A stretch of DNA of 64,000 nucleotides from IMG/VR virus record IMGVR_UViG_3300028840_002431, positions 352,540-416,539 of that record; one strand, written 5' to 3'. A model generated the notes under the pieces. It worked only from the letters and a program-made list of their open reading frames with translations. It was not told the DNA's origin and searched no databases. Below are positions 925 through 64,000 of the stretch, piece after piece (position 1 is the stretch's first letter; each line of letters starts with the position of its first letter). Both the position numbers and the translations under genes were made by a program.

Positions 925-927
925 ACT

Positions 928-2061: not shown

Positions 2062-2062
2062 G

Positions 2063-2797: not shown

Positions 2798-2823
2798 TTA
2801 CGCCTCCACGTTATACGGCACCA

Positions 2824-5004: not shown

Positions 5005-5180
5005 TAGCTACCGTATTGAAGCTTCTCTAGCTTCCGTTTGAGGCTGGCGATCTCGGCCTTGGTCGCGGCAATACCGAGTTCGCAGACCTGTTTCATGTGT
5101 TCGTTGAGCGCGAAGTTGCGCTTCTCCCATTTTGGAAACTCTTGCTTTTGAGTCTCACCCGGCTTCTTTTCGTTGTCCAT
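5004..5180 (-). CDS. Small hypothetical coiled-coil protein (58 aa)
   Basis: Start moved to the ATG at 5180 (MDNEKK), which has GAGGAGG upstream; its stop overlaps the next ATG. Confidence 0.6.
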   Translation of the reverse strand: MDNEKKPGETQKQEFPKWEKRNFALNEHMKQVCELGIAATKAEIASLKRKLEKLQYGS

Positions 5181-5181
5181 T

Positions 5182-25701: not shown

Positions 25702-26412
25702 TTAGACCGGAACTACTGTGTTGCTGTTATTAGCGAATCTGAGCGAGAAGCCCTTACCTGGACTGCCGTTTGCCGACACCGGAGCAAGGCCCGTGTCGAT
25801 GAATTCGCCGTACTGAGATACACCGTCGATGATATCCGTGACCGTCACGGAACTATTCTCAGCCACCATGGCCGAGTCGGAGGCGTAACTCGCAGAGTAG
25901 GAGTTCAGCCAACAACCCTCGTAGAAGGTCAAAAGGGCGCGAGGTGTAACAATGGGATTGTCCGCACTCGTCGGCCCTGTTGTGACTGTTGCCTCCACGG
26001 AGACACCGTTAGGATCTTGGAGAGAAGATAACTCCGAAAAGACCAGTTCCTGTTTGATGTCGAAGGGCCAACGATGGTGCCGCAAACTCCTGGCCAGTCC
26101 ATCGATGCCGCCCTTGTAACCGAGAATCTGAAACAAGTTCGCTGTGTAAAGCAGCGTCTTGTTCAGGGTCAGGGTCATCGGGTCGGTAACGCCCGGCACC
26201 AACTCAGCAACTTGGTCCCCGTAGCCCACACCACGAACCGGATCGATCGTGCGGGACTCGTCGAAGCCAAACTCCGAGATCACACCGAGTTGTTGGAAAC
26301 CGGCCACGCCCACGGTGTAACCGTAAATCTTACTCTTCTGGCTTACGGCGGCGCGGGTGTTAGGGGCCGTCCCCATCCGGTAGATGTAGTCAGAGGTAGT
26401 TACGTTTGCCAT
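25702..26412 (-). CDS. Tail tube protein (T4 gp19-like)
   Basis: GVISEFGFDESRTIDPVRGVG...ELVPG...MTLTLNKTLLY...PFDIKQ...YEGCWLNSYSASY...AENSSVTVTDI fits the contractile-tail tube pattern; followed by chaperones and tape measure. Confidence 0.75.
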   Translation of the reverse strand: MANVTTSDYIYRMGTAPNTRAAVSQKSKIYGYTVGVAGFQQLGVISEFGFDESRTIDPVRGVGYGDQVAELVPGVTDPMTLTLNKTLLYTANLFQILGYKGGIDGLARSLRHHRWPFDIKQELVFSELSSLQDPNGVSVEATVTTGPTSADNPIVTPRALLTFYEGCWLNSYSASYASDSAMVAENSSVTVTDIIDGVSQYGEFIDTGLAPVSANGSPGKGFSLRFANNSNTVVPV

Positions 26413-31853: not shown

Positions 31854-32723
31854 ATGGACTTAAATGTCCGAATTGAGAAGGGTTTGCCGACCGTTGTGCC
31901 GGATGCGATATCCTTCGAAACAGGCTTAACCAAAGAACAGTTAGAAGACCCGGAAGTGTTGGGGTATGAGCACCACGGGCCTGAATTCTCCGCCTACGAT
32001 AAAGGCGCGTTGCCGAGCTTCTACGAGGACCTCATCCTGGGAAGACCGATGCCCACGACCTTGGCCACTCCTGGGGTCCAGGACATCGACACCCTTCTTG
32101 CCATAGCCTTATTCTTACACCGGGATTTGGCGACCCACCCTTCTACCGCCCACGTTGTTTACACAGTGGACTTCATACACCGGCTTGGTCTACCAGCCCT
32201 GGCCCACCTGGACGACAACCTCGCACGCTTCTTTTCCTCCCTCCGAACCTATTTTCCGGAAGGACTCGGACAACGCGAACTCAGCGACCGGGTCCAACAC
32301 GGCGTCGGCTGGCTCAGAGAGTACATACACGACGGCACTTTAGCGCTCACCGCCCCGTCACGAGCCAGGGTCAGAATCCTGGACCAGGGCACATCAGGTT
32401 TCGTTGTCGCGACCGATGAGTCCGACACCCCTTTGTCGATCCACCTTGTTGACGGTTGGGTAGAACTCTACCGCCTTGGTTTCCTGAGGGGTGTCCTCTC
32501 CAAGAGCGGGCAAAACGACCGAAACTACGTTCTCGCCGCCCGTAAGAGCCTCTTCTTGCCCTTCGACCTGGAAAAGGCGTGCCACATCCTGAACCAGATG
32601 GAAAGCTCCATGGGAGAGCTACCCGACTGGAAGGTGTCAGAAGACGAATTATGGTTGTGGGGTCCGCCAGAAGGAACGTTGATCCTTCTTCGGCATATCA
32701 ACGACGTGCTCGTTAGAGTCTAA
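31854..32723 (+). CDS. Hypothetical protein, remote DHH-phosphoesterase-like candidate; only credible plus-strand gene
   Basis: 289 aa filling a gap free of minus-strand genes; EHHG and QDIDT motifs; its stop overlaps the convergent stop at 32720-32723. Confidence 0.6.
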   Translation: MDLNVRIEKGLPTVVPDAISFETGLTKEQLEDPEVLGYEHHGPEFSAYDKGALPSFYEDLILGRPMPTTLATPGVQDIDTLLAIALFLHRDLATHPSTAHVVYTVDFIHRLGLPALAHLDDNLARFFSSLRTYFPEGLGQRELSDRVQHGVGWLREYIHDGTLALTAPSRARVRILDQGTSGFVVATDESDTPLSIHLVDGWVELYRLGFLRGVLSKSGQNDRNYVLAARKSLFLPFDLEKACHILNQMESSMGELPDWKVSEDELWLWGPPEGTLILLRHINDVLVRV

Positions 32724-32971
32724 CCACCCCGCTTAACCCTAGCGTGGATATCTTTCAGGGCGTCCACAATCTCCGCTTGCTCTTTTTCAAGGTCCGCAAG
32801 ATTCTTCTTGGCCCTCTCCGCCCAATTCGAGGTTTCTCTGAGATCACGTTTGGCGTCGCCCAACGGCCCGGCGAGATTGATTACTCGCACGAAAGCTTCT
32901 TCCAAGTCGTCCTCAATAGAGGCACCCTTCTTTGTTCTAGCCTTGGCGGTCTTCCAGCGGAGATGGTCCAT
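32720..32971 (-). CDS. Small helical protein with MDxLRWK N-terminus
   Basis: MDHLRWKTAKART; GAGG RBS. Confidence 0.75.
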   Translation of the reverse strand: MDHLRWKTAKARTKKGASIEDDLEEAFVRVINLAGPLGDAKRDLRETSNWAERAKKNLADLEKEQAEIVDALKDIHARVKRGG

Positions 32972-32974
32972 GAT

Positions 32975-33256
32975 CTACCTCTTAGCGTCCATCCCGCCCC
33001 ACCAGTAAGCGAACTCCCAAAGACTGCTCGCAAGATTGGCGAAATGGCCTAAAGGAGGCCCTATGGGTGAACGTCCTTTCTTCGCAGCCCTCTCAGCTTG
33101 CTTGGCCGACGCCATCAATTCTGAAAAAGCCTGATCGAACTCGGCTTCCGCCTCCGGGTCGGCCGCCTTGAATCCGGCCTCGTAAGCCCTTTTCAACGTC
33201 TCTACAATAGGGCGATCCATACCCGCTTGTTTGGTTTTCCATTTGAGTTGGTCCAT
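32975..33256 (-). CDS. Small helical protein with MDxLKWK N-terminus
   Basis: Start moved to the ATG at 33256 (TGATG overlap): MDQLKWKTKQAG. Confidence 0.75.
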   Translation of the reverse strand: MDQLKWKTKQAGMDRPIVETLKRAYEAGFKAADPEAEAEFDQAFSELMASAKQAERAAKKGRSPIGPPLGHFANLASSLWEFAYWWGGMDAKR

Positions 33257-34002
33257 CAGATTTGCGCCCAATCATCAAAGCGGGTGTCCTTGAAACCGCC
33301 CTCAATTGAATTCATGTCTACCTGCATTTCCCACTCTTCACCTTCGTAGTCCTCGATGGTGAACACGATAGACTGTTGCTTCTGGCCTTTACCCCCGTAT
33401 TCGTCCCACTTCACATCTTCCACGTCCACCGGAGTGCCAAAAGTCTCCTCGTAATCCTCGTCGTCTCCTGTGAACTGGTTGGTCATTGTGACTGTGACTT
33501 CGACCCCATCCCCAATCGGGTAAGCATTAACGTCACTGATGTAATAGACGGAACCGGCGTGGCCCCCCTTTGGGACAAACTTGTGTTTCCGTAGCTTGCC
33601 GCTGGGCTTCCCTCTCTCATAATAACTCAACCACTTCTCGACTTCCCGGTTTCCGTACCAGTCGTCGTCTCTGGGAAGACCCTTGCGGGCCGCCGCCCTG
33701 ATATCGTCCTCAAGGAACTTGAACACATCCACGTAGAGTTGGACCCCGGAAGACATAACTACATCCCACACACCCATGGCCGCGTAACGAGGTGTGAACT
33801 CCCGGTCCTTGAGCCATTTCTCCACTAGATTCGCGGCTTTACGAGGGTCGAGTTTCCCAACGCTGTGGAGAAGATCCAAGGGAGAGTCCCCACCCATTGG
33901 GTCTTCCCCCCACCACCCGGCAGTCTTGCGCCGAGTGTAAGCTTTTTCAAAAGCCTTCCTCTCGACGACGTTCCTGTAACCCTCTACTACTTTTTCACGC
34001 AC
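33256..34002 (-). CDS. Hypothetical protein with KAFEKA..KTAG N-terminal tag
   Basis: 248 aa, coupled to its neighbours. Confidence 0.75.
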   Translation of the reverse strand: MREKVVEGYRNVVERKAFEKAYTRRKTAGWWGEDPMGGDSPLDLLHSVGKLDPRKAANLVEKWLKDREFTPRYAAMGVWDVVMSSGVQLYVDVFKFLEDDIRAAARKGLPRDDDWYGNREVEKWLSYYERGKPSGKLRKHKFVPKGGHAGSVYYISDVNAYPIGDGVEVTVTMTNQFTGDDEDYEETFGTPVDVEDVKWDEYGGKGQKQQSIVFTIEDYEGEEWEMQVDMNSIEGGFKDTRFDDWAQI

Positions 34003-34005
34003 GGT

Positions 34006-34338
34006 TTACTCCTCGTCTTCCGGAGGTGGTGTCCCCGGTTTGTGGCTCTTGTCGGTCGAGTAATGAGCCGGTCGCCACTTGATCTTATACTGACGAGCCA
34101 ACTTTTTAGCGGTCTTAACGGCCTCCTCGAAAGTCTTGGCCCACACAGTCCGAATCGAATCCCGCTCAATGACCTTGCCACCCCGAGATATCCCGACCTC
34201 TGTGCGCCATCCGTCAGACTCCGCCGCAATCACCTGAACCATCAGGGTGACTTTGTCAGAGCCGCCGACAAAATTATACTTCCACCGTTCCTTGTCAGCG
34301 GCCGTTTTCGTGTTCGTTTTCCAGCGAAGGTCGTCCAT
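34006..34338 (-). CDS. Small protein with MDxLRWK N-terminus
   Basis: MDDLRWKTNTKTAAD; GAGG RBS. Confidence 0.75.
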   Translation of the reverse strand: MDDLRWKTNTKTAADKERWKYNFVGGSDKVTLMVQVIAAESDGWRTEVGISRGGKVIERDSIRTVWAKTFEEAVKTAKKLARQYKIKWRPAHYSTDKSHKPGTPPPEDEE

Positions 34339-34339
34339 A

Positions 34340-34717
34340 TTACCTCGGAAAGATCTTGGCCCGCATTTGATCGGAGTACTCGCCAGGATCTCCGAACTTC
34401 TTGACGAACTTAGTCTCAGCCTTGGCGAGTTCGTCGAACGTCTTTTTGGAGATGTTCTCCAACTCCTTTACGGCGTCCTCTATCTTCTTGATCATGGCTT
34501 CGGCGTCTTTTCTAGCGGGGCCGTCTATAAAGTGAGCCGCGTCATAGTAGTCCCGCTTTGTCTCTGTGAGGTCGTACTCGATATCATGGAGAGTGTTCCA
34601 TACCTTATCGAGACAACGTCCCACGGGTCCGTCCCTAAGGAGGGCCTTACGGTTGAAAGCTGCGTCGAACGCGCTCTTCTCAAGAGCCTCCTTAAAAGCC
34701 TTCACCTCCTTGGACAT
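34340..34717 (-). CDS. Small helical protein with KAFKEALEKSA N-terminal tag
   Basis: 125 aa; AGGAGG RBS upstream. Confidence 0.75.
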   Translation of the reverse strand: MSKEVKAFKEALEKSAFDAAFNRKALLRDGPVGRCLDKVWNTLHDIEYDLTETKRDYYDAAHFIDGPARKDAEAMIKKIEDAVKELENISKKTFDELAKAETKFVKKFGDPGEYSDQMRAKIFPR

Positions 34718-34725
34718 AACACCTC

Positions 34726-35013
34726 CTACCGTCGCCGCTTCTTTACGTTTCTCTCCAGGATCTCGGCGGCTCTCCTGGCGTCCATCAAGGAGCGTGTTGC
34801 CTTGCTTATAGGCTCCAATACCGTGTCGGCCTCAAGCATACTCACCACTCCCTGATACTGGATGTTCGACACCATCTCTTCTAACTTCTTGACTGCCCGT
34901 GCGACCGCCATGAACTCCCGATCAACGGTCTTGAAGTCGGTGTCCTTCCAGCCCGCAGAACGCACGACTCCGTCAGACGCCGCGTTCCTTACCTTCCAAC
35001 GCAAAGCATCCAA
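34726..35013 (-). CDS. Small helical protein with MDxLRWK N-terminus
   Basis: TTG start with GGAGG RBS; MDALRWKVRNAAS. Confidence 0.7.
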   Translation of the reverse strand: MDALRWKVRNAASDGVVRSAGWKDTDFKTVDREFMAVARAVKKLEEMVSNIQYQGVVSMLEADTVLEPISKATRSLMDARRAAEILERNVKKRRR

Positions 35014-35029: not shown

Positions 35030-38000
35030 TTAGATCCGCGCCCTCAGATTGAACGTCAGGAGGATGTACAACAGCGGGAAGATCGGGCTGTAGAACATCT
35101 CAAACCTGAGAATCGTGGGATCGTCCTGGTCGATGGTAGCTGTCATGCCCGTGAAGGCTCCGACAATCTCAGCTTGCACGAGAGAGCGGAACAATCCGGT
35201 CATGGAGACCACGACCTCGTTGGTACGCGAAGCCAGGAACTTCGTGCCGATGAACGAGTCCAGGATAGCCCGGCTCTGTTGCTGGACGAAGTCAGCGATT
35301 TGGATGACTGTCGGAAGCCGTGTGAGCACCGAAGTCATGTTGGTGGTCAGGCCCTGACGAATCCGGATAATCGGGTCCAGATCTTCCAGGAGCGTAACAC
35401 CAGCAACCGCTGTCTGGTTCGCCTCGACAGGATCAAGGATACGCGGAATCCGCGTAAAGCCCTGAACCCGACGACGTGTGTAAGGAGTGGCTACATCGAC
35501 AGCCGGGGAAACGACAGCGCCAGCCACAGCGGCTGCGAAGAAGCTGCCATCGATCAGGCTCTCGAACGACTGCCCCAGTTCATCGGTCAAGGTGATAACC
35601 GATGAATCCGGGTAGTAGGCCACGATACGGCTGGAATTCAGCCCTCTGGCCACACTCTGAGCCGTCGTCGCGGAGGTGCCGGACGCGAATCCGATCATAC
35701 CCATCCGCTCTGCCTGATTCCGAGTGTTGCTCTGAATCTCGCAGTGTGAGGTCAGGTGCGTGTATACCGATGTGTCCGTGGACCCCGGAACGATGATATC
35801 CGGCCGGATGTTGCCCGGAAGCGGGGTCGCCAGTTCATCGATCGCCTCGTTGTACGACTGGGCGCTGGCTTGGTTCGTGTTCGGCTCCTTGAGGACCTGC
35901 TTCATGATGAGCAAGACGGCCCCGTTCAGGATCGACAAGTAACCAGACAGCGTCAGACGGTTCTCAGCCGACGTGCGGCCGAAGTTCGCCTCAATCGTCT
36001 TGAGTTGCTGGTAGATCTTGGGCGAGTAGTCCTGCTTCAAGTAGCGGTAGCTGATGAAGTAGAAGTCCCCAACGGCCGGTTCCACACCATCCGGGTTGTA
36101 CGTCACGAGAGACGCAGTGTCGTTCACGCCCACGCCAACGGTGTTTGTGACCAACAGTTCCAGACCACCGATGGAGTAGCGAGGAATCGACGGACTCACA
36201 TGGAAAGTCGTGGAGATCTCCAACGTGAAATACCCGGCTGGATCATAACTCCCGGTCGCGGACGGCAGAACCGTGAACCGAAGACCCGTACGAGCGTCTG
36301 TGTAGGTCTGGCCCGGATAACCGGTTCCAGCGGAACCCACAGCCGAAGTTGACGTTACGTCGTACTTATCGGACGGGTCCTCACCAACGTCTCCGTCGGT
36401 GCCCGGCGTGATGTTGATGCCTGTCGTCGGATTGAATGCCGAATTCGCGGAGTTCACGAATCCGATGCTCGAAGTAGCCGCACCCACCGTCAACGACTCG
36501 ATACGAATGTAGCTGTCGCCAGAGATTTCCTCGACGTAAGCCACAGCACCGGCCGCGAAACCAGCCGTGTCGTTGAGAATGTCCACGACCTCTTGAGCGC
36601 CAACCTGGGTCTGGGTGGCCGCGTCGTTCTGGGTGTACCCTAGTACATCGTTCGCAGAGCCACCGCCAATCAACAGGGAAGACCCGGTATCGTTGGTCGG
36701 GCTGGTCAGACGAATCTTGTCCAGGTTCACCCCGGTGCCCACCGACGCCAAGGCAGGGACCACGGCGTTGATGTCCGCGATAACTGTCGCGGGAAGAACG
36801 GCCGCACCCGCTGTCAGCGTGACGGTGTACTCCACGCCGTCCACAGTGACGACCAGTGTGTCGTTCAGACCGGTGGTGATGTTGAACGGGCCAGCAAGAG
36901 TGCCGAGATACGTGGCCGCCTTGCAGATGGCTCCGGTGGTCCCGTTGGCTTGCTGGAAGGTCGCGAAACCGAGAGTGGTCTCGGCCGTCCCCTGGTTGAT
37001 CGTGACATTCGCCACGTCGTCCAATCCAGCCGGTAGCGCACCCGGAACCTGACGACCCTCAATGATAAAGAAAACGTCGCCGGTAGCCGGTCCAACCTGC
37101 CGGAAGCTGGCCAGATTGTTCGGGGCTGTGGCAATGAAGTTCGGATCAGCGTCGATGGCCGCGTTGATCTCGCCTACGATGAAGGCCGGAAACTGGTTGC
37201 CAGCGGTCAAGCTGATCGTACCAATCGTGAACCCGTCGATCGTAAGATTCAGATCGTTATTAGGAGCCGGGGAGATGGCAATCTTACCAGCGTCCGGACC
37301 GGTCTGAATCGGAGTCACAGCGTCGCCCACCAGGAAAGCCTGGGCAGCCGCCGCCAGATTCGAGGACTGGTTCACGCCGTTGACCTGAGTGACCCAGGTG
37401 GCGGAGAACGGGGAGTAGAAGCTGTACGGAGCCGCTCCCTTGTTCGTGTAGCTCGCGTTGGAGCCAGGGGTCTGCCCGAAGGTCACTGTAACAACCTCGG
37501 ACACCGCCGTGCCGGAACCTGTGTGGAAGGCGTCCGGAATCAACTCCGAGCCACGCGGCCACTGGACGATCTGACTCAGACCGGACTTGGTTCCAAACCG
37601 GACCTCGTAGAGATTCTGATCGAGAATGGTCGAGAACACCGTGTACTCGCCCGTGCCGACCGGACCGGCAACCTGATTGGTCAGGATGAAGGTGTCATCC
37701 GACAACCGGCTGTAGTAGAAGGTCGCGTAGGCGTTATGGTCGGGCGGGACCGGGTCCTTGAGGACGATTCGCCGGTTCACACCATCCACGACAGTGACGG
37801 TCGCAGCCGGGCGGTTCAACGCATCTTGGAGGTTGATGCCCGTGTAAACCCTCACGAGATCCGGTCGGTTCGTCGTGAGCGCCTGACGGCTGTTAGCCAC
37901 CGAATTGAAGGTTTGAAGGCCCAGCGGAGTGCTACGCCCGTTACCCATGGTCGGAACCTCAGGCAACAGAAAGTCGGTGGACGATACTGTGGCCGGAATC

Positions 38001-39319
38001 GTTGTCGTGTCTGTGACCCGGTCACAGAGAGCCAGATAGTACTGACTGTCGATGAGGGTTCCGACGATTTGTCCGCCAGATCCGGTGTCACCATCGAACG
38101 GGGTCGCGCCCGGAGTGGTCGTTTCCGCCGTTACCTGGAAGCTTGCGCCCCAGTTGATGACGCTCACATCCGTGCTTGGGTTCGAGATAACGAAGTCCGT
38201 ACCCTGGATGTAGTCGTTACGACCCGGCGAGATCCCGCACCGCAGTACGGTGGTCACGAGGCTGTTGGGCAGGTAATCGAAGGTGTCCTGCCATGTGTTG
38301 GCCCAGTAGTCGATTGTGACAGTCGAGCCAGGAGCCGGGGCAAACGGCAGCGTGACGATACCGTTGGTGCCGTCAACCGCTTCGGCCACAACCTGTGTAC
38401 CGTCTACCTTGGCAACAACCTTGGACGGATCGGTTGTTGTGATTCCGCCGCTCGAACCATCCACGATTGGCCGGTTGAAGACCCGGAAATCGGCGTTACG
38501 GTTCGTGCTGTTACCTTCGGAGAAGCCCAAAGGACCGTTGGCGGTCCCGTTCCCAATCTCGATGCTGATTGAACTCGTGAACGAGATGTGGTCCCGGCCC
38601 TGACCGTCCGTGAAGACCGAAGTCGAAAGATTTGGAATCGCGGCAGCGTCAATGACCGATTTCAGGGTGGCGGCGCTGAGCGATCCGGCCGGGAACGTAA
38701 CCGTTGACTCCGTGCCGTTCACGTCGATGACAAAGATGTCGTTAACGCCGGTCGCAATGTCAAACGGAGCGTATCCCGGAGAAATCAGATTCGCGTTCTC
38801 AGTTGTGACCTGATCCGACACATCGTCGGTGAACGCTGTGTCTCCCCGGTGGAAGAAATAAGTGACGCGAACGTCGGCTTCCGGTTGGGTAGGCACCTGA
38901 AGGGTAACGAGGCCCTCTTGACCCCGCACAGACCCTAAAGATACGGGTACGCCGTTAACCGTGACAGTGACCGTTCTTGTGTCATTAGTCACCCGACCAA
39001 ATCCCTGGCCGTCTACAATCGGATAGTTCCTAACACGGAACGTCGTGAACGTACCGTCCTGAGCACCTAAGAGCAGGTTTTGAGGGTTCGTCGCATCAAC
39101 AACCCAGCTTTCTGACACGTCTTCGTTGACGATTTGCTGATCAACGGTTGCCGACGAGCCACGAACAAGCTCAAAATCGTTCTGCTCTAACTCTTCTTGA
39201 CCAACACCGATCAGGGCGGGGATTCTAAGTCCAGCCACCAAGTTCGAGGCATTGGTTTCAGTCAGGGTACGTGTGTAGACACCCGGAGGAGCATATGAAA
39301 TGAAGGGGCCAATCGCCAT
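35030..39319 (-). CDS. Contractile tail sheath protein with large inserted domains (1429 aa)
   Basis: N-terminal YAPPGVYTRT...IPALIGVG. C-terminal sheath core: AERMGMIG, SSRIVAYYP, GVTLLE, IRIRQGLTT, QIADFVQQQSRAILDSFIG, DPTILRFEMFYSPIFPLLYI. Confidence 0.9.
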   Translation of the reverse strand: MAIGPFISYAPPGVYTRTLTETNASNLVAGLRIPALIGVGQEELEQNDFELVRGSSATVDQQIVNEDVSESWVVDATNPQNLLLGAQDGTFTTFRVRNYPIVDGQGFGRVTNDTRTVTVTVNGVPVSLGSVRGQEGLVTLQVPTQPEADVRVTYFFHRGDTAFTDDVSDQVTTENANLISPGYAPFDIATGVNDIFVIDVNGTESTVTFPAGSLSAATLKSVIDAAAIPNLSTSVFTDGQGRDHISFTSSISIEIGNGTANGPLGFSEGNSTNRNADFRVFNRPIVDGSSGGITTTDPSKVVAKVDGTQVVAEAVDGTNGIVTLPFAPAPGSTVTIDYWANTWQDTFDYLPNSLVTTVLRCGISPGRNDYIQGTDFVISNPSTDVSVINWGASFQVTAETTTPGATPFDGDTGSGGQIVGTLIDSQYYLALCDRVTDTTTIPATVSSTDFLLPEVPTMGNGRSTPLGLQTFNSVANSRQALTTNRPDLVRVYTGINLQDALNRPAATVTVVDGVNRRIVLKDPVPPDHNAYATFYYSRLSDDTFILTNQVAGPVGTGEYTVFSTILDQNLYEVRFGTKSGLSQIVQWPRGSELIPDAFHTGSGTAVSEVVTVTFGQTPGSNASYTNKGAAPYSFYSPFSATWVTQVNGVNQSSNLAAAAQAFLVGDAVTPIQTGPDAGKIAISPAPNNDLNLTIDGFTIGTISLTAGNQFPAFIVGEINAAIDADPNFIATAPNNLASFRQVGPATGDVFFIIEGRQVPGALPAGLDDVANVTINQGTAETTLGFATFQQANGTTGAICKAATYLGTLAGPFNITTGLNDTLVVTVDGVEYTVTLTAGAAVLPATVIADINAVVPALASVGTGVNLDKIRLTSPTNDTGSSLLIGGGSANDVLGYTQNDAATQTQVGAQEVVDILNDTAGFAAGAVAYVEEISGDSYIRIESLTVGAATSSIGFVNSANSAFNPTTGINITPGTDGDVGEDPSDKYDVTSTSAVGSAGTGYPGQTYTDARTGLRFTVLPSATGSYDPAGYFTLEISTTFHVSPSIPRYSIGGLELLVTNTVGVGVNDTASLVTYNPDGVEPAVGDFYFISYRYLKQDYSPKIYQQLKTIEANFGRTSAENRLTLSGYLSILNGAVLLIMKQVLKEPNTNQASAQSYNEAIDELATPLPGNIRPDIIVPGSTDTSVYTHLTSHCEIQSNTRNQAERMGMIGFASGTSATTAQSVARGLNSSRIVAYYPDSSVITLTDELGQSFESLIDGSFFAAAVAGAVVSPAVDVATPYTRRRVQGFTRIPRILDPVEANQTAVAGVTLLEDLDPIIRIRQGLTTNMTSVLTRLPTVIQIADFVQQQSRAILDSFIGTKFLASRTNEVVVSMTGLFRSLVQAEIVGAFTGMTATIDQDDPTILRFEMFYSPIFPLLYILLTFNLRARI

Positions 39320-41134: not shown

Positions 41135-42220
41135 TCACCCGTCTGCGTGCTCTTCCATAGCGAGGACCAAAAGCCCTTCCGCTACGGCTGTCATTGGATC
41201 TCTGGCGGTACGGATCTCGCTGATCTCTATCGGGAACCCGCGCCTCTTGACGGCCTCGAACTCCTCGGTGAAGACCTTCATAAACCCGTTCGCCTTACTC
41301 GTTCCCCCAGACACCACGAATGGGACAGGGTCGGGTAGATCAATAGCTGCCTGAACCTTCTTGAATTGGACCGCGATATTGTCCAAGCAATACTTGATCA
41401 AAGCCCGGATATACAGGGCGATGGCTTCTTCTTCCCGGTTTGTGGGATTTGACAGATCTACACCCTTCTCCTTGATGGCGCACATCCTGGATGCTGTGGA
41501 GCCGATGGCCTTGGCCGCGTGAGCATCGACCCAGTCCCCACATCTCGCCAGGGCGAAGTCCAACCCTTTCACCGTCTGGTAAGACAGGGCTATATTCATC
41601 ATACCGCTGCCGAAAGACGCGGCGAGACCGGAGAAATTCTCGTTCATGCACTGCGAGTAAATAATAGCCATCGCCTCATTCATGGGATGAGGTGTGTACC
41701 CCAACTCCGTGAGGATCTTCCGGAACACCTCCGTGTGGTAGATGATATCCTGGCCGACATCGTCCACAGGCTCAGCCGGAACACTGTAGAAGCAATGCTC
41801 GTTAGGCGAGACCGGCTTGCCGAGCACGTTCTCAATCAACAGGCTCAAAATCTGTTGCGCTTCTAACTCAGCGGACGAAATGATGCCGTGAGACAGCGGG
41901 CGGCGCACCTCCCGCTTGAACAGATTCGCCATGTTGAGAGCCGGGTCCCCTAACACGACAAGGGTGTCTCCTTGCTCGACGTAGTCAACTTGGGACAGGC
42001 GTAAGGTTTTCTTGGTCTCGATGTCCAGATCAATGAACACGTCCCGAATGCGCTTGGTCTCTATTTGATTACCGCCCGTCTGACGAGCCGACACCAAGTT
42101 CATGGTTCCCAAGTCCAGGCCACACCCAGGCGCGGACGCAGTCGCTGGAGCCGGGGCAGCGGGTTTGGCCGGTGGTTGCTGCGGGGGTGGTTGCGGTTGT
42201 TGAGGTTGGTCTTGCGCCAT
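41135..42220 (-). CDS. Actin-fold ATPase (MreB/FtsA/ParM superfamily)
   Basis: Phosphate-1 GLDLGTMN, connect-1 PMNEAMA, phosphate-2-like SFGSGMMNIA, adenosine VVSGGTS, connect-2 DPMTAVAEG. Confidence 0.85.
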   Translation of the reverse strand: MAQDQPQQPQPPPQQPPAKPAAPAPATASAPGCGLDLGTMNLVSARQTGGNQIETKRIRDVFIDLDIETKKTLRLSQVDYVEQGDTLVVLGDPALNMANLFKREVRRPLSHGIISSAELEAQQILSLLIENVLGKPVSPNEHCFYSVPAEPVDDVGQDIIYHTEVFRKILTELGYTPHPMNEAMAIIYSQCMNENFSGLAASFGSGMMNIALSYQTVKGLDFALARCGDWVDAHAAKAIGSTASRMCAIKEKGVDLSNPTNREEEAIALYIRALIKYCLDNIAVQFKKVQAAIDLPDPVPFVVSGGTSKANGFMKVFTEEFEAVKRRGFPIEISEIRTARDPMTAVAEGLLVLAMEEHADG

Positions 42221-44263: not shown

Positions 44264-45622
44264 CTACCACTCTATGTTTTCCCACACCTTGGTGCGTCCT
44301 CTTAGCTCACGCTCGTCCGGGATGTTGGGTTTCTCGGTTGGCTTTGCTTCCGCCTCAAGCTCCGGGCCGTGAGGCTTGAACTGGACTGCGTCGTATTTGA
44401 CCGGGTCGCCCACCGGGACCTGATACCGGATGTCCTTCTCGTCCAGGTGGCCGATGTTGAAGTGTTGTTGGAGAACCATTCCCCGGTTACTCGGGAACCT
44501 GACCGGGCCTATCGAGTACCGGACACCATTGATCTTCACCAGAAAGTCCCGTTGGGAAAGGATAGGCATCGGGCCTGTCCACACCTCATAAACGTGCTCC
44601 ACGGTCCTTCCCGTATCCCTCTGGGCTTTCCGCCTCTCGGCATCGTCCGGGGCTATCATGGCCTCGTACGGACCTTCATAGCCGCCCAAAACGCCAGTCC
44701 CGTAACACTTCCGACAGTCATTCAAAGGCTGTCCGTAATGCTCTGCCTGGAAGCACGAGCAAGGGACTCCCACCTCCTTACGGATGAACAGCTTCACCCG
44801 CTCACCGCCTTGAGACAATATCCACCGATTACGCCGGACAGCTTCCCGCCAGATATAGTCCAGCTTCTCGATTTCCATCGAGTTGGTGGCCACTGCGTTC
44901 TCAATCGGCGTCTCAACCATCTGCTCGCACTGGACCTGAGTCAGGTCACATTTCAGCGGCACTCCGACGGTCGTGAGCCGGTAAAAGACCCGCTGGTCAA
45001 GATCGGTCTTGAGTAAGGATCGGTTGCGCCGGTACGTGACCGTCACCCGGCTATCGGGACCAGGGACCAACGAAGGGTCTAGCTTCTGAGTCTCGACATC
45101 CGCGTAGATGAACGGGTCGATTTCGACCTCTCCGGAGAACCCATCCACCCGCAATGGCTGGACTGTCTGGCCGTCGATCTTTACCCAAACGTCGTCTGGC
45201 AAATTAGCCGTGACGGCCTGGGACCCCTCCTTGACGATCGGGCAGAGAAGTGTCTTGAAAATCCACCGGGGAGCCTTGGTCCCGGCCCCACACTCGCCCC
45301 TTATAATCCACCGGTCTTCTGTAACCTCCTCGTCGATCACGAGTTCGTTGTCTGTCCGGTCTCGCCAGAAGGAGGCACAGGCCAAGGTGTCAGAAATACG
45401 GAAGAAGGGACCATACTCCGAATCGAAGGAGCGGTAGATGTTAACACCAAGGATTTTGAACTGGCTGTTCAACGCCAGAATCGCCGGATTGTCCCACGTA
45501 AGATCGTATATCCCCGGCTCGAAACCACTGGTCAAGAAGACGTTGAGCGGCGGTAACGGCCACGGAGTCTTTGTATACTCCAGGGTCGTTATGTTCCGAT
45601 CCCGGTTAGTGATATAGGCCAT
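44264..45622 (-). CDS. Head-closure/neck protein (gp14-like) with Zn-finger
   Basis: GERVKLFIRK...CSC...CRKCYGTG...RDFLVKINGVRYSIGPV...QQHFNI pattern; located in the neck region. Confidence 0.55.
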   Translation of the reverse strand: MAYITNRDRNITTLEYTKTPWPLPPLNVFLTSGFEPGIYDLTWDNPAILALNSQFKILGVNIYRSFDSEYGPFFRISDTLACASFWRDRTDNELVIDEEVTEDRWIIRGECGAGTKAPRWIFKTLLCPIVKEGSQAVTANLPDDVWVKIDGQTVQPLRVDGFSGEVEIDPFIYADVETQKLDPSLVPGPDSRVTVTYRRNRSLLKTDLDQRVFYRLTTVGVPLKCDLTQVQCEQMVETPIENAVATNSMEIEKLDYIWREAVRRNRWILSQGGERVKLFIRKEVGVPCSCFQAEHYGQPLNDCRKCYGTGVLGGYEGPYEAMIAPDDAERRKAQRDTGRTVEHVYEVWTGPMPILSQRDFLVKINGVRYSIGPVRFPSNRGMVLQQHFNIGHLDEKDIRYQVPVGDPVKYDAVQFKPHGPELEAEAKPTEKPNIPDERELRGRTKVWENIEW

Positions 45623-46018: not shown

Positions 46019-47482
46019 TCAGGTAACAGCCTTCACGAATTCAGACAGGGCCTTACGGTACTTACCAGGGGCGCTGCGTTTGAGAGCCTTGAAGAACTCG
46101 TGGGGTTTCAGCATGTCTATCGCTCTGTAGCCACCCAAAGCGTCCGCTTTCTCCTGCCAGTCCCGGTCACGGTAGTCTGGAAACGGAATCGTGCCGGTAA
46201 ACAATTTGACGGCCGACCGAAGCTCCAACGGCGCTGGTAATGCTTCGCCGTCCCTTTTTCGTTCCTTAAGTTGATCCCGATGTTCCTTCTGGGCTTGCTT
46301 CCAGTGCCACTCGAACGAATCAATCGAGTCCGCGAGCCTAGTGTAAAACTCGATGTCGTCCAGGGCGTGAAAGTCCAACTGCCTAACTGAGAGGCCCTGG
46401 TCCTTTAGCCGTTGGCGTAACTTGATAACCTCCGGGTCATCCTTTCTGTACGAAGGGTGTCCGGGGTCGTACTGTTGTCGAAACTCTGGGGTCTGAATCT
46501 TACGAGAAGGGAAACCAGGGCGACGACCCCGCATTTCCGGCAGCATCAATGTACTCCGGTCCACAGCATAGGCCATATAACTCTGAGCAAAATGCTGTAG
46601 CTCGTGCCGCAACGACTTGCCAAGACCCTCTAACCCTTCCCATCGGAGGGTGTCGGGGATAATAATCGTCAGAAGCCTCTGAGGATCGTACCAAAAAGCC
46701 TTGACCCCTTTTGTCGCCTTGGTTGTCAGCTTTACCTTTATCCCCTGCCAACCGAGCTTCGTCCTCTCGATGGACTTCTTGAGGTCTTCTAACAACTGCT
46801 TACGCATCTCCGCGACCTCAGGCTTGGCCGACTCGTCTTTTTCTCCCAGGAACTTAACGGTCCCCTTCAACTCTTCTACGTGCTCGTCTATTTGCTTCTG
46901 GAGTTTCTTTTCCAGATCCTTCGTATCGTATCGCCAGCCCTTGAGATTGATGGGAAACTCCCTCACGGCCTCGTCGCCTTTGAGTGTAACGCCGGGCTGA
47001 ATCCTCTTCTTGATACTGGCTATTTCACGTTGAATGTCGGCTATGTCCTGTCTCTTACTCTCGTAGTGACCGTCCACACGACCCTTGTAGTACTCATACC
47101 TATTGTCGGCTCGCTCTTGAAGATCCTTTTGCTTCTCAGGGGTCATCTTCTGAAACAACCGGATGCTGTCACGTTCCCCAGGATGCCCAAAGACCCACGA
47201 AACGTCGTAGAACGCTTTGTAGTTCTTCCACGTCGGGTTGGTCTTGTACTCTTTGGCGACATCCAAAAGCTGTGACAGCCTCTTATCGTAGTCCGTTTTT
47301 TCCTTCCGACCCTTCAACAAGGACTGTGCTTTCTTAAGTTCATGGTCGGAAACGACGGCTACAACCCAGTCGTAAATCTCTTCGTACATGGCGGGCGGCG
47401 CTTCGAATATCCCGGCGACTCGTAAGGCCGCTTCCCTACGACGGTCGTAGCTGTAGAACGTCGTACGATCGTAGGTGTACAT
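46019..47482 (-). CDS. Hypothetical protein with HExxH zinc-metallopeptidase-like motif
   Basis: LRHELQHFAQSY plus a downstream DDIEF; N-terminal REAALRVAG tag. Confidence 0.55.
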   Translation of the reverse strand: MYTYDRTTFYSYDRRREAALRVAGIFEAPPAMYEEIYDWVVAVVSDHELKKAQSLLKGRKEKTDYDKRLSQLLDVAKEYKTNPTWKNYKAFYDVSWVFGHPGERDSIRLFQKMTPEKQKDLQERADNRYEYYKGRVDGHYESKRQDIADIQREIASIKKRIQPGVTLKGDEAVREFPINLKGWRYDTKDLEKKLQKQIDEHVEELKGTVKFLGEKDESAKPEVAEMRKQLLEDLKKSIERTKLGWQGIKVKLTTKATKGVKAFWYDPQRLLTIIIPDTLRWEGLEGLGKSLRHELQHFAQSYMAYAVDRSTLMLPEMRGRRPGFPSRKIQTPEFRQQYDPGHPSYRKDDPEVIKLRQRLKDQGLSVRQLDFHALDDIEFYTRLADSIDSFEWHWKQAQKEHRDQLKERKRDGEALPAPLELRSAVKLFTGTIPFPDYRDRDWQEKADALGGYRAIDMLKPHEFFKALKRSAPGKYRKALSEFVKAVT

Positions 47483-48404: not shown

Positions 48405-48800
48405 TTACTCATTGTAGTACAACGCCTGGGCAAGCAAGCTCATCAGGCTGTTTATCTGGCTCACCTTGCCTTCAAAGCGCTTGAACTCTCTGTTGAACGC
48501 GCCGTCACGCATCTTTTTGATGTGCTTCAAAACGTCTCTCGCCCACCGTTCCGAGATGCCGCCCAGAGCCTTTTCGATCTTATCGAGCGCCGTCTTGGTG
48601 GCCGGTTTGATCCTGGGGTACTTGCCCACCAAATCCGCAAGGCGTTTCACCTTGGAGTCTTTTAGGTCTGGTTCAGCGTCCACGATAGCATCGAACCAGT
48701 CGTCAGTGGAGGCGTCCCACGCCGCTGTCCGAACAGCCGCCTCAAAAGCTACACGTGGGTCGGCTTGAAGCGCCTTTTCAAATGCTTTACGCGGGTTCAT
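48405..48800 (-). CDS. Small helical protein with tandem PRKAFEKAL/PRVAFEAAVRTAA tags
   Basis: 131 aa; ATGA overlap with the upstream gene. Confidence 0.75.
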   Translation of the reverse strand: MNPRKAFEKALQADPRVAFEAAVRTAAWDASTDDWFDAIVDAEPDLKDSKVKRLADLVGKYPRIKPATKTALDKIEKALGGISERWARDVLKHIKKMRDGAFNREFKRFEGKVSQINSLMSLLAQALYYNE

Positions 48801-50707
48801 CTCGCGGCCTTTCTGAGGGCTTCTTCAAAATCCATGCGGGCTGTCTTTTTCTTCTTGGGCTTCTCTGGCCCGCGCCATTTGGTGGTACCCTCGATCCTGT
48901 CCTTGAGAGAAGCGCAGAAGGCTCCCGTGTCCGACACTTTGCCTTCCATCTTCTTCATACACTTCTTGACATCACCGCCGATGGACTTCCAGAACTTCTT
49001 GCGGCTTTCGTCCGTCCAGCCTTCCGGCATGGTCTCCCACTTGGCCGCGACCTTGTCCTTGTCCTGGCCAAACAGTTCCGACGCGGCGACCTTCTCCATC
49101 TCTAGCTCGACCATCTTCTCGGCGCACGGAAGACAGATGTCGGCCACCTCTTCCGCTGTCAGATAGAAGTCGGGTTCCTGAGCTTCCAGAGCCTCTTCAA
49201 ACGCTACTCTCGGGTTGCTCATGGACGCCTCCTTGGCTAGATAGTTGGAGGGGACCGCCTTCTTGACCGCTTTGGCTACGGTCTGCCCCGCACGGCTGCC
49301 GACATCACTGATGTGGACCTTGCCGCCTTTCCAATACGCTATCTTGTCGCCGCCCATCCAATTGCCATCCAGGCGTTCTCCGTCAGTGGAAAGCTTCTTA
49401 CTCTCCATTGACTTATGCTCATAAAAAGCGTCTATCACCTTCTTATCCTTGGGGCCTAAACGCAAATCAGCTTGCTTCTCCGTGGCTGCAACATGCAAAG
49501 CCGCCTCGAATTCAAACACCGGGTCAACAGAAGCCGTCTTGTCCATGTGTGTGATAACTCCCGTCATGAAGGCCAGATGGGTGTAAGCCTCGTACAGAGC
49601 CTCCATCCGCCGTTCGTAAGAATACCCGGCGAGCGGGGATTCCTGGTCCACCTTGTCGTCCCGGAGTTCCTTGAAGGCTTTTTCGGCCCTGTCGTAGGAC
49701 TCCTGGAGAGCCTTGATCTGGTTCTGGTCGCCACGGGACTTGGAACTCTTCCCCTTGTCGATAACACCATCGGCCAGCTTCATACCGGCCTTGGCTTCAT
49801 CTAACAACCGGTCCTTGGCCTTCTCGATATTGGCTATGGCCTTCTTCTTTCCTTCGTCCCGGTCCCCACGGTACTTGTAGTCGCTGGTCCGGCTCCACGC
49901 CTTTAACGCCCGCTCGAATTGTTTGAAGAACTTGTCAGCGTTCTTCTTACTCCGCTCCGCCTTCCGACGGACCTTCATGTCTCCTAACACAGAGGGAGCG
50001 TCAGGTTGTTGCGGATCGGTCAAGTCTTGCCACACAACATTGTACGCACGCCACACATATAGAAGTTTTCGCATGGCGAACCGGTGTGGATCGGCCGCCT
50101 CATCCGTCTTGGCATCCATGTAGGCGCGGGCCGCCTTGTGCTGGGCCTTCTGGACATTGATGTAACCCTTCTTGATGTCCTCCTGGTCCAGCTTACCCGA
50201 CTTCAAGCCGTCTTCGAGCTTCTTCTGTAGGGCCTTGATCTTCGGGTGGTCGTAGGACTCGTTCTTATCGAGGTCCGCCGCTGGCATGTCATCGATGGCC
50301 CTCTTGGCTTCGTTGGGAAGCCCTCGCAACCACTTGGAGGGGAGCTTCATACCGTCAGGCATCTTCTGAGGGTAGTACTTGTGGTTCTTCTCAGTCCGAT
50401 ACGCCTCTGACCTTTGGTGTGCCGGTTCGTCCTTGATCTCGTCGGAGGCAACCCTGGCCTCCAACACCGTCTGGAACTCGACTGCCGCCAGCTTCGAAAT
50501 CATTCTCTTCTTGCTCTGAATGGTGGCTTCCAGACCCTGTTCGATTGTCTTAGCGTTTTCGAGAGTCAGGTTTTCGACGGCCTTACCCGCTTTCAGGTCG
50601 GCCATGTCTTTGCGGAGCTTTTTCAGATCCTGTTCGTCTCTCTTGAGGGCCTCTTGCCACTCCTTCTTGGTCGTCTCGTAGGCAGCCTTCTCCATACTTA
50701 GCTCCAA
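48797..50707 (-). CDS. Lys/Glu-rich modular protein (putative internal head polyprotein)
   Basis: 636 aa (TTG at 50707 or ATG at 50695); modules separated by RVAS, KTAS, KEAS, KVAA and AFEEAL linkers. Confidence 0.75.
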   Translation of the reverse strand: MELSMEKAAYETTKKEWQEALKRDEQDLKKLRKDMADLKAGKAVENLTLENAKTIEQGLEATIQSKKRMISKLAAVEFQTVLEARVASDEIKDEPAHQRSEAYRTEKNHKYYPQKMPDGMKLPSKWLRGLPNEAKRAIDDMPAADLDKNESYDHPKIKALQKKLEDGLKSGKLDQEDIKKGYINVQKAQHKAARAYMDAKTDEAADPHRFAMRKLLYVWRAYNVVWQDLTDPQQPDAPSVLGDMKVRRKAERSKKNADKFFKQFERALKAWSRTSDYKYRGDRDEGKKKAIANIEKAKDRLLDEAKAGMKLADGVIDKGKSSKSRGDQNQIKALQESYDRAEKAFKELRDDKVDQESPLAGYSYERRMEALYEAYTHLAFMTGVITHMDKTASVDPVFEFEAALHVAATEKQADLRLGPKDKKVIDAFYEHKSMESKKLSTDGERLDGNWMGGDKIAYWKGGKVHISDVGSRAGQTVAKAVKKAVPSNYLAKEASMSNPRVAFEEALEAQEPDFYLTAEEVADICLPCAEKMVELEMEKVAASELFGQDKDKVAAKWETMPEGWTDESRKKFWKSIGGDVKKCMKKMEGKVSDTGAFCASLKDRIEGTTKWRGPEKPKKKKTARMDFEEALRKAAR

Positions 50708-51886: not shown

Positions 51887-52270
51887 CTACATCCAAAACT
51901 TTCTCTCCGTTAGCTCCAGTCCTTTGTCCTTAGCCTTCGTCTTCAACGACACAACTTCCGCTGGCACAAACCTTCCGGACCAGAAATACCCTACCCGCAC
52001 CACGCCCTGGTACTTCGTGGAGTTGACATCAATCTGCCCTGGCCGCGCCTCTACCCCTCGCATCACGGAGTTAGCACCCTCTCGAACAGCGGCTACAGCG
52101 TCGTCTATCCGACGCTTCGAGGTGCTGGGATCGGCTCCAGCCCACGCGATTTGAATATTGGTACAGAAGAAGGCCCCCTCTTTTCCGGCGTACATTATCA
52201 CGTCCGGGTATGTTTCCCCGTGCGTGGCCGCTTCTTTCAGCGCTTCTTCGAATGCCTTACGAGGGTCCAT
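51887..52270 (-). CDS. Hypothetical protein with PRKAFEEALKEAA tag (127 aa)
   Basis: Start moved to the ATG at 52270 (GAGG RBS) to avoid overlap with the upstream gene. Confidence 0.7.
   Translation of the reverse strand: MDPRKAFEEALKEAATHGETYPDVIMYAGKEGAFFCTNIQIAWAGADPSTSKRRIDDAVAAVREGANSVMRGVEARPGQIDVNSTKYQGVVRVGYFWSGRFVPAEVVSLKTKAKDKGLELTERKFWM

Positions 52271-62643: not shown

Positions 62644-62644
<1 letters not shown>
62057..62644 (-). CDS. Putative fibre-associated protein (shared N-terminal anchor plus jelly-roll-like C-domain)
   Basis: MAATKYTYSISED...GDVCDIWFDDALSGGDQTILDG versus MAETTYTYSIADD...GDVLGVVFKNSLPAADKTVLDG. Confidence 0.55.

Positions 62645-64000
<1,356 letters not shown>

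What the first reader, a model, noticed from the sequence alone, without database searches (positions are those of the whole stretch)
32720..35013. Array of small genes sharing an MDxLRWK N-terminal tag
Seen: four of six consecutive genes begin MDALRWKV, MDDLRWKT, MDQLKWKT and MDHLRWKT, then diverge completely. The other two carry the AFxxAL tag. Codons differ among copies (for example TTG versus ATG start), so selection is on the peptide, not on a DNA repeat. Inference: a second targeting or recombination-cassette leader, resembling the variable small-gene arrays that encode host-takeover or anti-defence proteins.
Basis: partly seen in the sequence, partly recalled or inferred. Interest (0 to 1): 0.64.

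Follow-up and report, generated by a model that had tools for sequence, protein, structure and literature searches.

The report
Short N-terminal address tags in a huge phage
A 416-kb uncultured phage and its closest relative put a few short, conserved peptide "labels" on the first residues of dozens of otherwise unrelated proteins, most likely to sort them to one destination such as the virus particle, as phage T4 does with its capsid-targeting sequence.

Summary
Four of six tightly packed minus-strand genes just downstream of the tail-sheath gene start M-D-x-L-[RK]-W-K-[TV] and share nothing else. The other two carry variants of a second tag, M-x-N-P-R-K-A-F-E-x-A-L. Synonymous sites differ freely among copies, so selection acts on the peptide.

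The array is one visible piece of a larger system. The 416-kb genome has about 8 tag-A genes, 12 tag-B genes and 12 tag-C genes (M-x-Y-S-Y-D-R-R). It also has a longer leader D and a looser N-terminal motif E. A complete 398-kb relative (sheath 86% identical, GC 48% against 55%) carries the same tags on partly different proteins. More distant relatives lack them, but one has its own 30-residue leader on 10 proteins.

The tags are modular. Homologous bodies carry different tags or none, tags occur in tandem, and tagged proteins include an AAA ATPase and a SprT-like peptidase. The array sits in a hypervariable island between the sheath gene and a conserved gene.

My best reading (about 0.4) is docking or packaging leaders analogous to the T4 capsid-targeting sequence. 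These would deliver separate effectors that a cultured relative bundles into one polyvalent protein. No receptor, cleavage or virion evidence exists.

The parts
34726..35013 (-). g1, 95 aa, TTG start, tag A (MDALRWKV). First gene after the sheath gene.
   Evidence: ORF and sequence. GGAGG lies 5 nt upstream of the TTG. No Pfam or PHROG hit.
34340..34717 (-). g2, 125 aa, variant of tag B (MSKEVKAFKEAL, then SAFDAAF).
   Evidence: The G002 orthologue (62% identical) starts with canonical MSNPRKAFESAI.
34006..34338 (-). g3, 110 aa, tag A (MDDLRWKT), then a linker and a body of beta strands plus one helix.
   Evidence: The G002 orthologue keeps the tag while the linker has a 5-residue indel. In the AF2 model residues 1-18 are disordered. 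Ten body relatives elsewhere lack the tag.
33256..34002 (-). g4, 248 aa, GTG start. Tag-B-like KAFEKAY at residues 16-22, followed by RRKTAG.
   Evidence: The G002 orthologue (56% identical) starts with a tandem tag B, MNPRKAFENAINNPRSAFEEAL.
32975..33256 (-). g5, 93 aa, tag A (MDQLKWKT). Its ATG overlaps the g4 stop codon.
   Evidence: The body is 46% identical to G002 33291-33653, which carries leader D instead of tag A.
32720..32971 (-). g6, 83 aa, tag A (MDHLRWKT). Last gene of the array.
35030..39319 (-). Tail sheath gene (1429 aa). Upstream boundary of the variable island.
   Evidence: tblastn to annotated sheath genes. It is 86% and 78% identical in G002 and G001.
31854..32723 (+). Conserved 289-aa gene of unknown function. 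Downstream boundary of the variable island.
   Evidence: It is 73%, 68%, 63% and 44% identical in G002, G001, L139 and L140.
46019..47482 (-). 487-aa protein starting with tandem tag C (MYTYDRTTFYSYDRRR). It sits in the neck/tail module, in the slot that holds a polyvalent protein in Tunturi_5.
   Evidence: Synteny.
48405..48800 (-). 131-aa protein with tandem tag B (MNPRKAFEKALQADPRVAFEAA).
   Evidence: No database relatives.
48797..49222 (-). 141-aa tag-B module (MSNPRVAFEEAL) nested in frame at the end of the 636-aa ORF 48797-50707. It has its own AAGGAGG box and ATG.
   Evidence: G002 has the same arrangement.
51887..52270 (-). 127-aa tag-B protein (MDPRKAFEEAL).
   Evidence: In G002 it is fused in frame behind another tag-B module.
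25702..26412 (-). Conserved virion structural protein, probably the tail tube. In LR745208.1 it lies almost directly after the sheath gene.
   Evidence: 47% identical to Tunturi_5 gp329, annotated as a virion structural protein, and 42% identical to the LR745208.1 copy.

Best explanation
The MDxL[RK]WK peptide (tag A) is one of several short N-terminal address or docking leaders that this huge-phage lineage attaches to otherwise unrelated proteins. The others are tag B (M-x-NPRKAFE-x-AL), tag C (M-x-YSYDRR), the 45-residue leader D and the looser motif E (h-R-V-A-x-R-[FY]-L).

Each leader is a flexible N-terminal extension joined to its body by a variable linker. I infer that it is recognised by a phage-encoded partner and brings the protein to a common destination. 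The most likely destination is the assembling virion, so that the proteins travel with the DNA into the next host. This would work like the T4 capsid-targeting sequence on its internal proteins and Alt, and like the N-terminal packaging signal of P1 DarB.

On this view the lineage gives each small effector its own tag, whereas a cultured relative bundles effector domains into one polyvalent virion protein.

**Shown:** the tags exist, they are selected as peptides, they are modular, they are restricted to this lineage, and they sit at true N-termini.

**Inferred:** that they bind a partner, and that the destination is the virion.
For: **1. Peptide-level selection.** Ser uses both AGY and TCN codons, Arg uses both CGN and AGR, and Leu uses both TTR and CTN at equivalent tag positions.

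**2. N-terminal specificity.** 7 of 16 tag-A matches follow a start codon. All 7 tag-B matches and 11 of 14 tag-C matches lie within 3 codons of one.

**3. Conservation across genomes.** G002 (GC 48%, complete, with direct terminal repeats) has 7 tag-A, 11 tag-B, 7 tag-C and 4 leader-D genes. G001 has only tag B. LR745208.1 and Tunturi_5 have none.

**4. Modularity.**
- The g5 body carries tag A here and leader D in G002.
- A head-module domain carries tag A, tag C or no tag in different copies.
- Relatives of the g3 body elsewhere have other N-termini.
- Tags occur in tandem two or three times.
- Tag-B modules are fused in frame, each keeping its own Met.

**5. Flexible leader.** The g3 tag and linker are disordered in the model, and the linker carries an indel between orthologues.

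**6. Context.**
- The array follows the sheath gene with no promoter-like or terminator-like site on its strand.
- Other tagged genes sit between the major capsid gene and the uracil-DNA-glycosylase-like gene in G002, and in the neck/fibre module of all three phages.

**7. Effector link.**
- Tunturi_5 gp321, in the syntenic slot, is a polyvalent protein with SprT-like, 2H/Acb1-like, ART-PolyVal and GNAT domains.
- Its SprT-like domain is 36% identical to a stand-alone tag-C protein here.
- The stand-alone ART-PolyVal gene of LR745208.1 starts with a motif-E-like sequence.
- Polyvalent proteins are argued to be injected with the DNA (PMC5512222).

**8. Precedent.** T4 internal proteins are diverse and share only a capsid-targeting sequence (PMC3012670, PMC5694885). 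The first 30 residues of P1 DarB are sufficient for packaging (PMC9024508).
Against: - There is no proteomic, expression or binding evidence at all. Only DNA metagenome runs hold this phage.
- No receptor was identified.
- G001 shares near-identical capsid and scaffold-region genes yet lacks tags A and C. A core head protein is therefore an unlikely specific receptor.
- Tag A has no conserved Glu, so it lacks the L/I/A-x-E site at which T4-type prohead proteases remove capsid-targeting sequences. Only tags B and D and the LR745208.1 leader contain A-x-E.
- About half of the tagged genes lie among tRNA genes far from the structural operons, some on the other strand.
- Some tagged proteins are enzymes that could act in the cytoplasm: AAA ATPase, topoisomerase IB, CCA-adding enzyme.
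- The structure models are of low confidence.
Confidence: 0.4

Rival explanations
1. The leaders are docking peptides for a partner that is not the virion. Possible partners are an intracellular compartment or replication factory, a phage chaperonin or AAA unfoldase (folding, or timed degradation as a degron), or a modifying enzyme. The tags would sort or regulate proteins inside the infected cell.
For: - Tagged proteins include an AAA ATPase, topoisomerase IB, a CCA-adding enzyme and a P-loop protein.
- The genome encodes a GroEL-like protein and an actin-like protein.
- Many tagged genes lie in the tRNA-rich accessory region rather than in late operons.
- Several leader classes could mean several destinations.
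Against: - No compartment shell gene or adaptor was identified.
- The clearest clusters sit inside structural modules: after the sheath gene, after the major capsid gene in G002, and in the neck/fibre module.
- The link to polyvalent-protein domains points to delivered effectors.
Confidence: 0.25
2. The leaders are nucleic-acid-binding N-terminal arms. They would be basic peptides that tether each protein to phage DNA or RNA, in the way the N-terminal strand of Arc-type repressors or the arginine-rich motif of lambda N works. This comparison comes from memory and was not tested.
For: - Tags and linkers are rich in Arg and Lys: RWKT, RRKTA, PRK.
- The g3 body gives weak fold matches to the DNA-binding WGR domain.
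Against: - The strict conservation of Trp, Asp and Tyr positions, and five distinct motifs, are not what generic basic arms look like.
- Tag B and leader D are amphipathic and acidic rather than basic.
- No cognate repeated DNA or RNA element was looked for or seen.
Confidence: 0.08
3. The tagged genes are ordinary paralogues of one or a few fast-evolving families, and only the N-terminus is still recognisable.
For: - Many bodies look helical and charged.
- g5 and g6 share weak similarity over about 60 residues.
- B_82584 and C_66185 share 37% identity over 56 residues.
Against: - Bodies range from 57 to 487 aa. They include a beta-sheet domain, an AAA ATPase and a SprT-like peptidase.
- Homologous bodies carry different tags or none.
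- Tags occur in tandem.
- Orthologues keep the tag while the adjacent linker changes.
Confidence: 0.07
4. The conserved feature is a DNA or RNA element that overlaps the start codon. It could be a recombination site for cassette exchange, a translation-initiation enhancer or an operator, and the peptide would be a by-product.
For: - The motif always sits at the start codon.
- The island content differs in every relative, as expected if cassettes are exchanged.
Against: - Third codon positions, and even whole codon families, differ among copies while the amino acids are kept.
- The tags persist in genomes of 48% and 55% GC.
- Upstream regions share no common motif.
Confidence: 0.05

Closest known systems
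T4 capsid-targeting sequence (CTS) on internal proteins IPI-III and Alt
   Same: - A peptide of about 10 residues at the extreme N-terminus is the only thing shared by otherwise diverse proteins.
- The genes sit in hyperplastic regions.
- The cargo includes anti-host enzymes (PMC3012670, PMC5694885).
   Different: - There is no sequence similarity to the T4 tag.
- Here there are at least four or five leader classes on about 30 genes per genome, against one class on a handful of genes.
- Tag A has no Glu-containing protease site.
- Packaging and cleavage are unproven.
[quoted passage not shown]
   Same: An N-terminal stretch (30 residues) is sufficient to send a protein into the capsid for delivery (PMC9024508).
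   Different: In P1 the signal is not a motif repeated on many proteins. No homology to the Dar proteins was found here.
Polyvalent proteins of phages (Iyer et al. 2017)
   Same: - The same kinds of domains occur. The SprT-like/MPTase domain here is 36% identical to that of the Tunturi_5 polyvalent protein gp321.
- The same slot in the structural module is used.
   Different: Here the domains are separate small proteins, each with its own leader, rather than one giant polypeptide. No ART-PolyVal domain was found in this genome.
Cargo-loading and encapsulation peptides of encapsulins and bacterial microcompartments (from my own knowledge)
   Same: Short terminal peptide, flexible linker and unrelated cargo. 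Encapsulin shells have the same fold as phage capsids.
   Different: Those peptides are usually C-terminal (encapsulins) or poorly conserved amphipathic helices (microcompartments). Their cargo genes neighbour the shell gene. Nothing of this was tested here.
Shared N-terminal propeptides of giant-phage head proteins (SPN3US gp53/gp54, phiKZ inner-body proteins)
   Same: These are giant phages, and head or ejection proteins have identical N-terminal stretches that contain A-x-E or S-x-E sites (PMC5694885). Tags B and D and the LR745208.1 leader contain A-x-E.
   Different: Those proteins are paralogues with propeptides longer than 100 residues. Here the bodies are unrelated and the tags are 8-12 residues long.

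Membership tests
T4-type capsid-targeting sequence system | A short (10-20 aa) N-terminal peptide is the only feature shared by otherwise unrelated proteins. | tested here: met
   Only the first 8 residues are shared. Bodies are diverse and exchangeable.
T4-type capsid-targeting sequence system | The tag ends in a prohead-protease site (L/I/A/S/G-x-E) and is removed during maturation. | tested here: inconclusive
   Tag A has no conserved Glu, and the downstream x-x-E matches are not consistent. Tags B and D and the LR745208.1 leader have a conserved A-x-E. Cleavage itself cannot be tested with these tools.
T4-type capsid-targeting sequence system | The tag is necessary and sufficient for incorporation into the prohead. 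| not testable with these tools
   This needs virion proteomics or reporter fusions. Only DNA metagenome runs exist.
T4-type capsid-targeting sequence system | Sequence relatedness to the T4 tag or to T4 internal proteins. | tested here: not met
   No PHROG or Pfam hit for any array protein. The motifs differ from the T4 tag as I recall it.
Polyvalent protein (Iyer et al. 2017) | Several effector domains, usually with an MPTase, in one large polypeptide. | tested here: not met
   Tagged proteins have one domain or none. The SprT-like domain stands alone in a 227-aa protein. The polyvalent architecture is present only in Tunturi_5 gp321.
Single paralogous gene family | Members can be aligned over most of their length or share one fold. 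| tested here: not met
   BLASTP aligns only the tag. The low-confidence g3 model is beta strands plus a helix. The g4 model, too poor for a fold search, predicts a helical part followed by beta strands. Other tagged proteins are an AAA ATPase and a SprT-like peptidase.
DNA-level repeat or recombination cassette | Nucleotide identity among copies beyond what the peptide requires. | tested here: not met
   The codon table shows free synonymous variation. blastn of the array finds nothing in the phage collection.

The most novel reading that the evidence does not exclude
This lineage of ~400-kb phages runs a multi-address protein-sorting code. At least five classes of N-terminal leader are combined freely with effector and enzyme bodies. 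Different classes would direct proteins to different places or loading steps, for example the capsid interior, the neck or tail, or an intracellular compartment. The code would replace the polyvalent-protein strategy of related phages. It would be the first combinatorial signal-peptide-like system described within a virus genome.
Probability: 0.25. Interest if true: 0.85.

Novelty: new variant of a known kind. Interest (0 to 1): 0.68.

Why it matters
If the tags are packaging or sorting signals, they mark, from sequence alone, the set of proteins that an uncultured huge phage delivers or localises together. That set is about 30 genes per genome, nearly all of unknown function. It would be a ready-made candidate list for host-takeover and counter-defence factors.

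The tags would also show that the T4 solution (one short tag, many cargoes) has been scaled up and diversified in huge phages as an alternative to polyvalent proteins.

Finally, they would provide portable peptides of 8-12 residues for loading foreign proteins into large capsids. The tag and body swaps between two sequenced relatives make the hypothesis directly testable.

Tried and rejected
- **Family scans.** Pfam and PHROGs on all six array proteins gave nothing above threshold.
- **Word-based protein search.** g3 and the tag-B protein at 48405-48800 found only themselves.
- **IMG/VR scan with the tag-A pattern.** It returned 31 loci. All but two were out-of-frame chance hits, and those two are 100% identical pieces of this same phage.
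- **Phage collection.** blastn of the array and tblastn of g4 found no match.
- **Structure.** The g4 model was too poor to search (pLDDT 44). The g3 model (pLDDT 58) gave only weak WGR-domain matches, E about 0.04 and TM 0.43, which I treat as a lead only.
- **Protein atlas.** g4 gave nothing above 0.76. The 487-aa protein gave only weak leads to LPD and SprT clusters.
- **Prohead protease.** It could not be assigned to a solved family, so its cleavage rule is unknown. Searching for x-x-E sites behind tag A gave no consistent pattern.
- **Upstream regions of the tagged genes.** No common promoter or RNA motif.
- **Genes shared by G000 and G002 but absent from G001.** There are 105, too many to name a receptor.
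- **Expression.** No RNA run holds the locus.
- **Complex prediction.** Not used, because I have no specific pair to claim.
- **Chance look-alike.** The uracil-DNA-glycosylase-like gene starts MHPSWKTAL. From memory, this resembles the usual N-terminus of that enzyme family, so I did not count it as tag A.
Full report
**What the window is.** The window is the last 64 kb of a single 416,539-bp IMG/VR virus contig (G000; CheckV completeness 87%, GC 55%). Nearly all genes run on the minus strand. The 1429-aa protein at 35030-39319 is a tail sheath. Other structural genes, a UvrD-type helicase, glycosyltransferases and an actin-like gene are also present.

The nearest GenBank relatives are the uncultured 485-kb phage LR745208.1 (W01) and the cultured Tunturiibacter phage Tunturi_5 (W02). 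Only sediment and seawater DNA metagenomes hold the sequence.

**The observation.**
- They are separated by 17 nt or less, or they overlap.
- Five have a GGAGG or GAGG box, and g5 is coupled to the g4 stop codon.
- The TTG of g1 is the only possible start in its 16-nt spacer.
- The back-translated tag occurs 4 times in the window against 0.14 expected.
- BLASTP aligns only the first 8 residues between the four tag-A proteins.
- None of the six has a Pfam or PHROG family.

**Selection is on the peptide.** The codon tables of all copies show free use of synonymous codons. This includes both codon families of Ser, Arg and Leu, while the amino acids stay fixed. A DNA repeat, a recombination site or an RNA element cannot explain that.

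**The array is part of a genome-wide system.**

*Tag A.* A six-frame scan of the whole genome finds further tag-A genes at 73209, 74549, 75198 and 81872. With the consensus M-D-x(1,2)-[RK]-W-K, 7 of 16 six-frame matches directly follow a start codon.

*Tag B.* The AFxxAL feature of g2 and g4 is a variant of a second tag, M-x-N-P-R-K-A-F-E-x-A-L. Ten other proteins carry it at their start.

*Tag C.* A third tag, M-x-Y-S-Y-D-R-R, often continued as K-T-A, starts 12 proteins.

*Leader D and motif E.* A 45-residue leader D (M-E-K-I-A-[SN]-P) was also found. A looser motif E (h-R-V-A-x-R-[FY]-L) is 10- to 18-fold enriched in the first 30 residues of proteins.

*Enzymes among the tagged proteins.*
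- AAA ATPase with tag A.
- SprT-like peptidase with tag C.
- Topoisomerase IB, and a CCA-adding enzyme in G002, both with motif E.

**Relatives.** A pattern scan of IMG/VR for tag B found two complete genomes with direct terminal repeats.
- G002: 398,071 bp, GC 48%, sheath 86% identical.
- G001: 411,618 bp, GC 44%, sheath 78% identical.

G002 has 7 tag-A, 11 tag-B, 7 tag-C and 4 leader-D genes. G001 has only 4-5 tag-B genes, all in the neck/fibre module. W01 and W02 have none of these tags.

W01 instead has its own 30-residue leader, M-T-T-L-R-S-K-L-I-R-L-A-H-E-N-P..., on 10 proteins of 92-349 aa. The same leader occurs on other metagenomic proteins. Shared leaders on divergent bodies are therefore a trait of this wider group, while the leader sequences are specific to each lineage.

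**The island.** The space between the sheath gene and the conserved plus-strand gene at 31854-32723 differs in every relative.

| Genome | Content of the island |
|---|---|
| G000 (this window) | Six tagged genes |
| G002 | g3, g2 and g4 orthologues in a different order, two further tag-A genes (MDNKRWKV, MDQKWKTK), a CCA-adding enzyme and an untagged gene |
| G001 | Four unrelated untagged genes |
| L139 | An HTH-type gene and a CRISPR-like array |
| L141 | One 70-aa membrane ORF |
| W01 | The sheath gene is followed almost directly by the tube-like gene |

No promoter-like or terminator-like site lies on the minus strand between the sheath gene and the array. Co-transcription with this late gene is therefore plausible but not shown.

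**Modularity.** This is the strongest argument for a tag.
- The g3 orthologues keep the tag while the linker behind it has a 5-residue indel.
- The g2 and g4 orthologues in G002 carry canonical, and in g4 tandem, tag B where G000 has variants.
- The g5 body carries tag A in G000 and leader D in G002.
- A C-terminal domain of a head-module protein occurs with tag A, with tag C or without a tag.
- A tag-C protein has an orthologue that lacks the leader.
- Ten relatives of the g3 body in a library of 1.84 billion proteins align only from residue 9-15 or later. The seven whose sequences I read have unrelated N-termini.
- Tags occur two or three times in tandem.
- Tag-B modules are fused in frame, each still with its own Met. 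In this window one has its own AAGGAGG box (start at 49222).

**Structure.** The AF2 model of g3 has low confidence (pLDDT 58). It leaves residues 1-18 disordered, followed by four strands and a helix. The g4 model is unusable, but it predicts a helical half followed by a beta-rich half. Together with the AAA and SprT-like bodies, this argues against one paralogous family.

**Mechanism.** I commit to docking leaders that send proteins to a common phage-encoded partner, most likely during virion assembly.

*Precedents.*
- Such tags are 10-20 residues long and are cut off by the prohead protease (PMC5694885).
- The first 30 residues of P1 DarB suffice for packaging (PMC9024508).

*Link to polyvalent proteins.*
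- Tunturi_5 gp321 lies between the homologues of the window genes 47482-48402 and 44264-45622. It is a polyvalent protein with SprT-like, 2H/Acb1-like, ART-PolyVal (E 6e-48) and GNAT domains.
- In G000 that slot holds the 487-aa protein with tandem tag C.
- The SprT-like domain, 36% identical to that of gp321, stands alone behind tag C elsewhere in G000.
- The stand-alone ART-PolyVal gene of W01 starts with a motif-E-like sequence and follows a leader gene.
- Polyvalent proteins are argued to be injected with the DNA (PMC5512222).

Separate effectors would each need their own packaging signal, and the tags could be that signal.

**Weaknesses.**
- Nothing shows binding, packaging or cleavage.
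- Tag A lacks a conserved Glu.
- G001 shares the head genes but not tags A and C.
- Half of the tagged genes lie among 42 tRNA genes and a tmRNA gene, away from the structural operons.
- Several tagged enzymes could work in the cytoplasm.

I therefore give the virion reading 0.4 and a non-virion docking role 0.25. The remainder goes to nucleic-acid-binding arms, paralogy and DNA- or RNA-level elements.

**Novelty.** I found no description of multi-class, combinatorial N-terminal leaders in huge phages in the literature searches. The principle is known from T4 and P1, so I rate this a new variant of a known kind. It is of clear interest because the hypothesis can be tested directly.

Noticed in passing
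window 41135-42220 (-): Actin-like gene (Pfam Volactin, E 1e-71) inside the neck/tail module. LR745208.1 has a copy 56% identical and LR756511.1 one 29% identical. Its role in a huge phage is unknown.
   Followed up: partly
L139:9415-10423 (IMGVR_UViG_3300037722_000745): A 323-kb relative carries a CRISPR-like array in the same sheath-adjacent island that holds the tag-A array here. It has at least 13 repeats of about 37 nt with a period of about 74 nt.
   Followed up: partly
G000 64-94 kb (loci L131, L132): 42 tRNA genes and a tmRNA gene (tag peptide ANDNAAPLAIAA) are interleaved with tagged small genes. This recalls the hyperplastic tRNA and internal-protein regions of T4.
   Followed up: no
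L047:1501-5589 (Tunturi_5 gp321): The gene is annotated as a MutT/NUDIX hydrolase. By Pfam it is a polyvalent protein with SprT-like, 2H/Acb1-like, ART-PolyVal, GNAT and DUF3990 domains.
   Followed up: yes
LR745208.1 (W01), 10 sites, e.g. 398171-398575 (-): A 30-residue leader (MTTLRSKLIRLAHENPALRPQLLPLLKEA) sits on 10 divergent proteins, one of them between the capsid and protease genes. The same leader occurs on other metagenomic proteins.
   Followed up: partly
window 48797-50707 (-): A 636-aa ORF contains, in frame, a complete tag-B module with its own ribosome-binding site and ATG (start at 49222). This suggests nested long and short products. G002 and G001 have similar in-frame fusions.
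   Followed up: partly
G000 285850-287094, 58775-60430 and 1-5702 with window 62644-64000: The genome encodes a type IB topoisomerase (with motif E), a GroEL-like chaperonin and a giant collagen-like Gly-x-y repeat protein that runs off the contig end.
   Followed up: no
window 34006-34338 (g3 body): The g3 body belongs to a small family of about 100-aa proteins found in tightly packed small-gene arrays on metagenomic contigs. Its central hairpin also matches repeats in Big_7-type Ig-domain proteins. Fold matches to WGR domains are weak.
   Followed up: partly
G000 17156-17443 (-): A 95-aa gene overlapping the start of the prohead protease gene has a tag-C-like TTYDRRGLS near its N-terminus. 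It has no homologue in the relatives.
   Followed up: no
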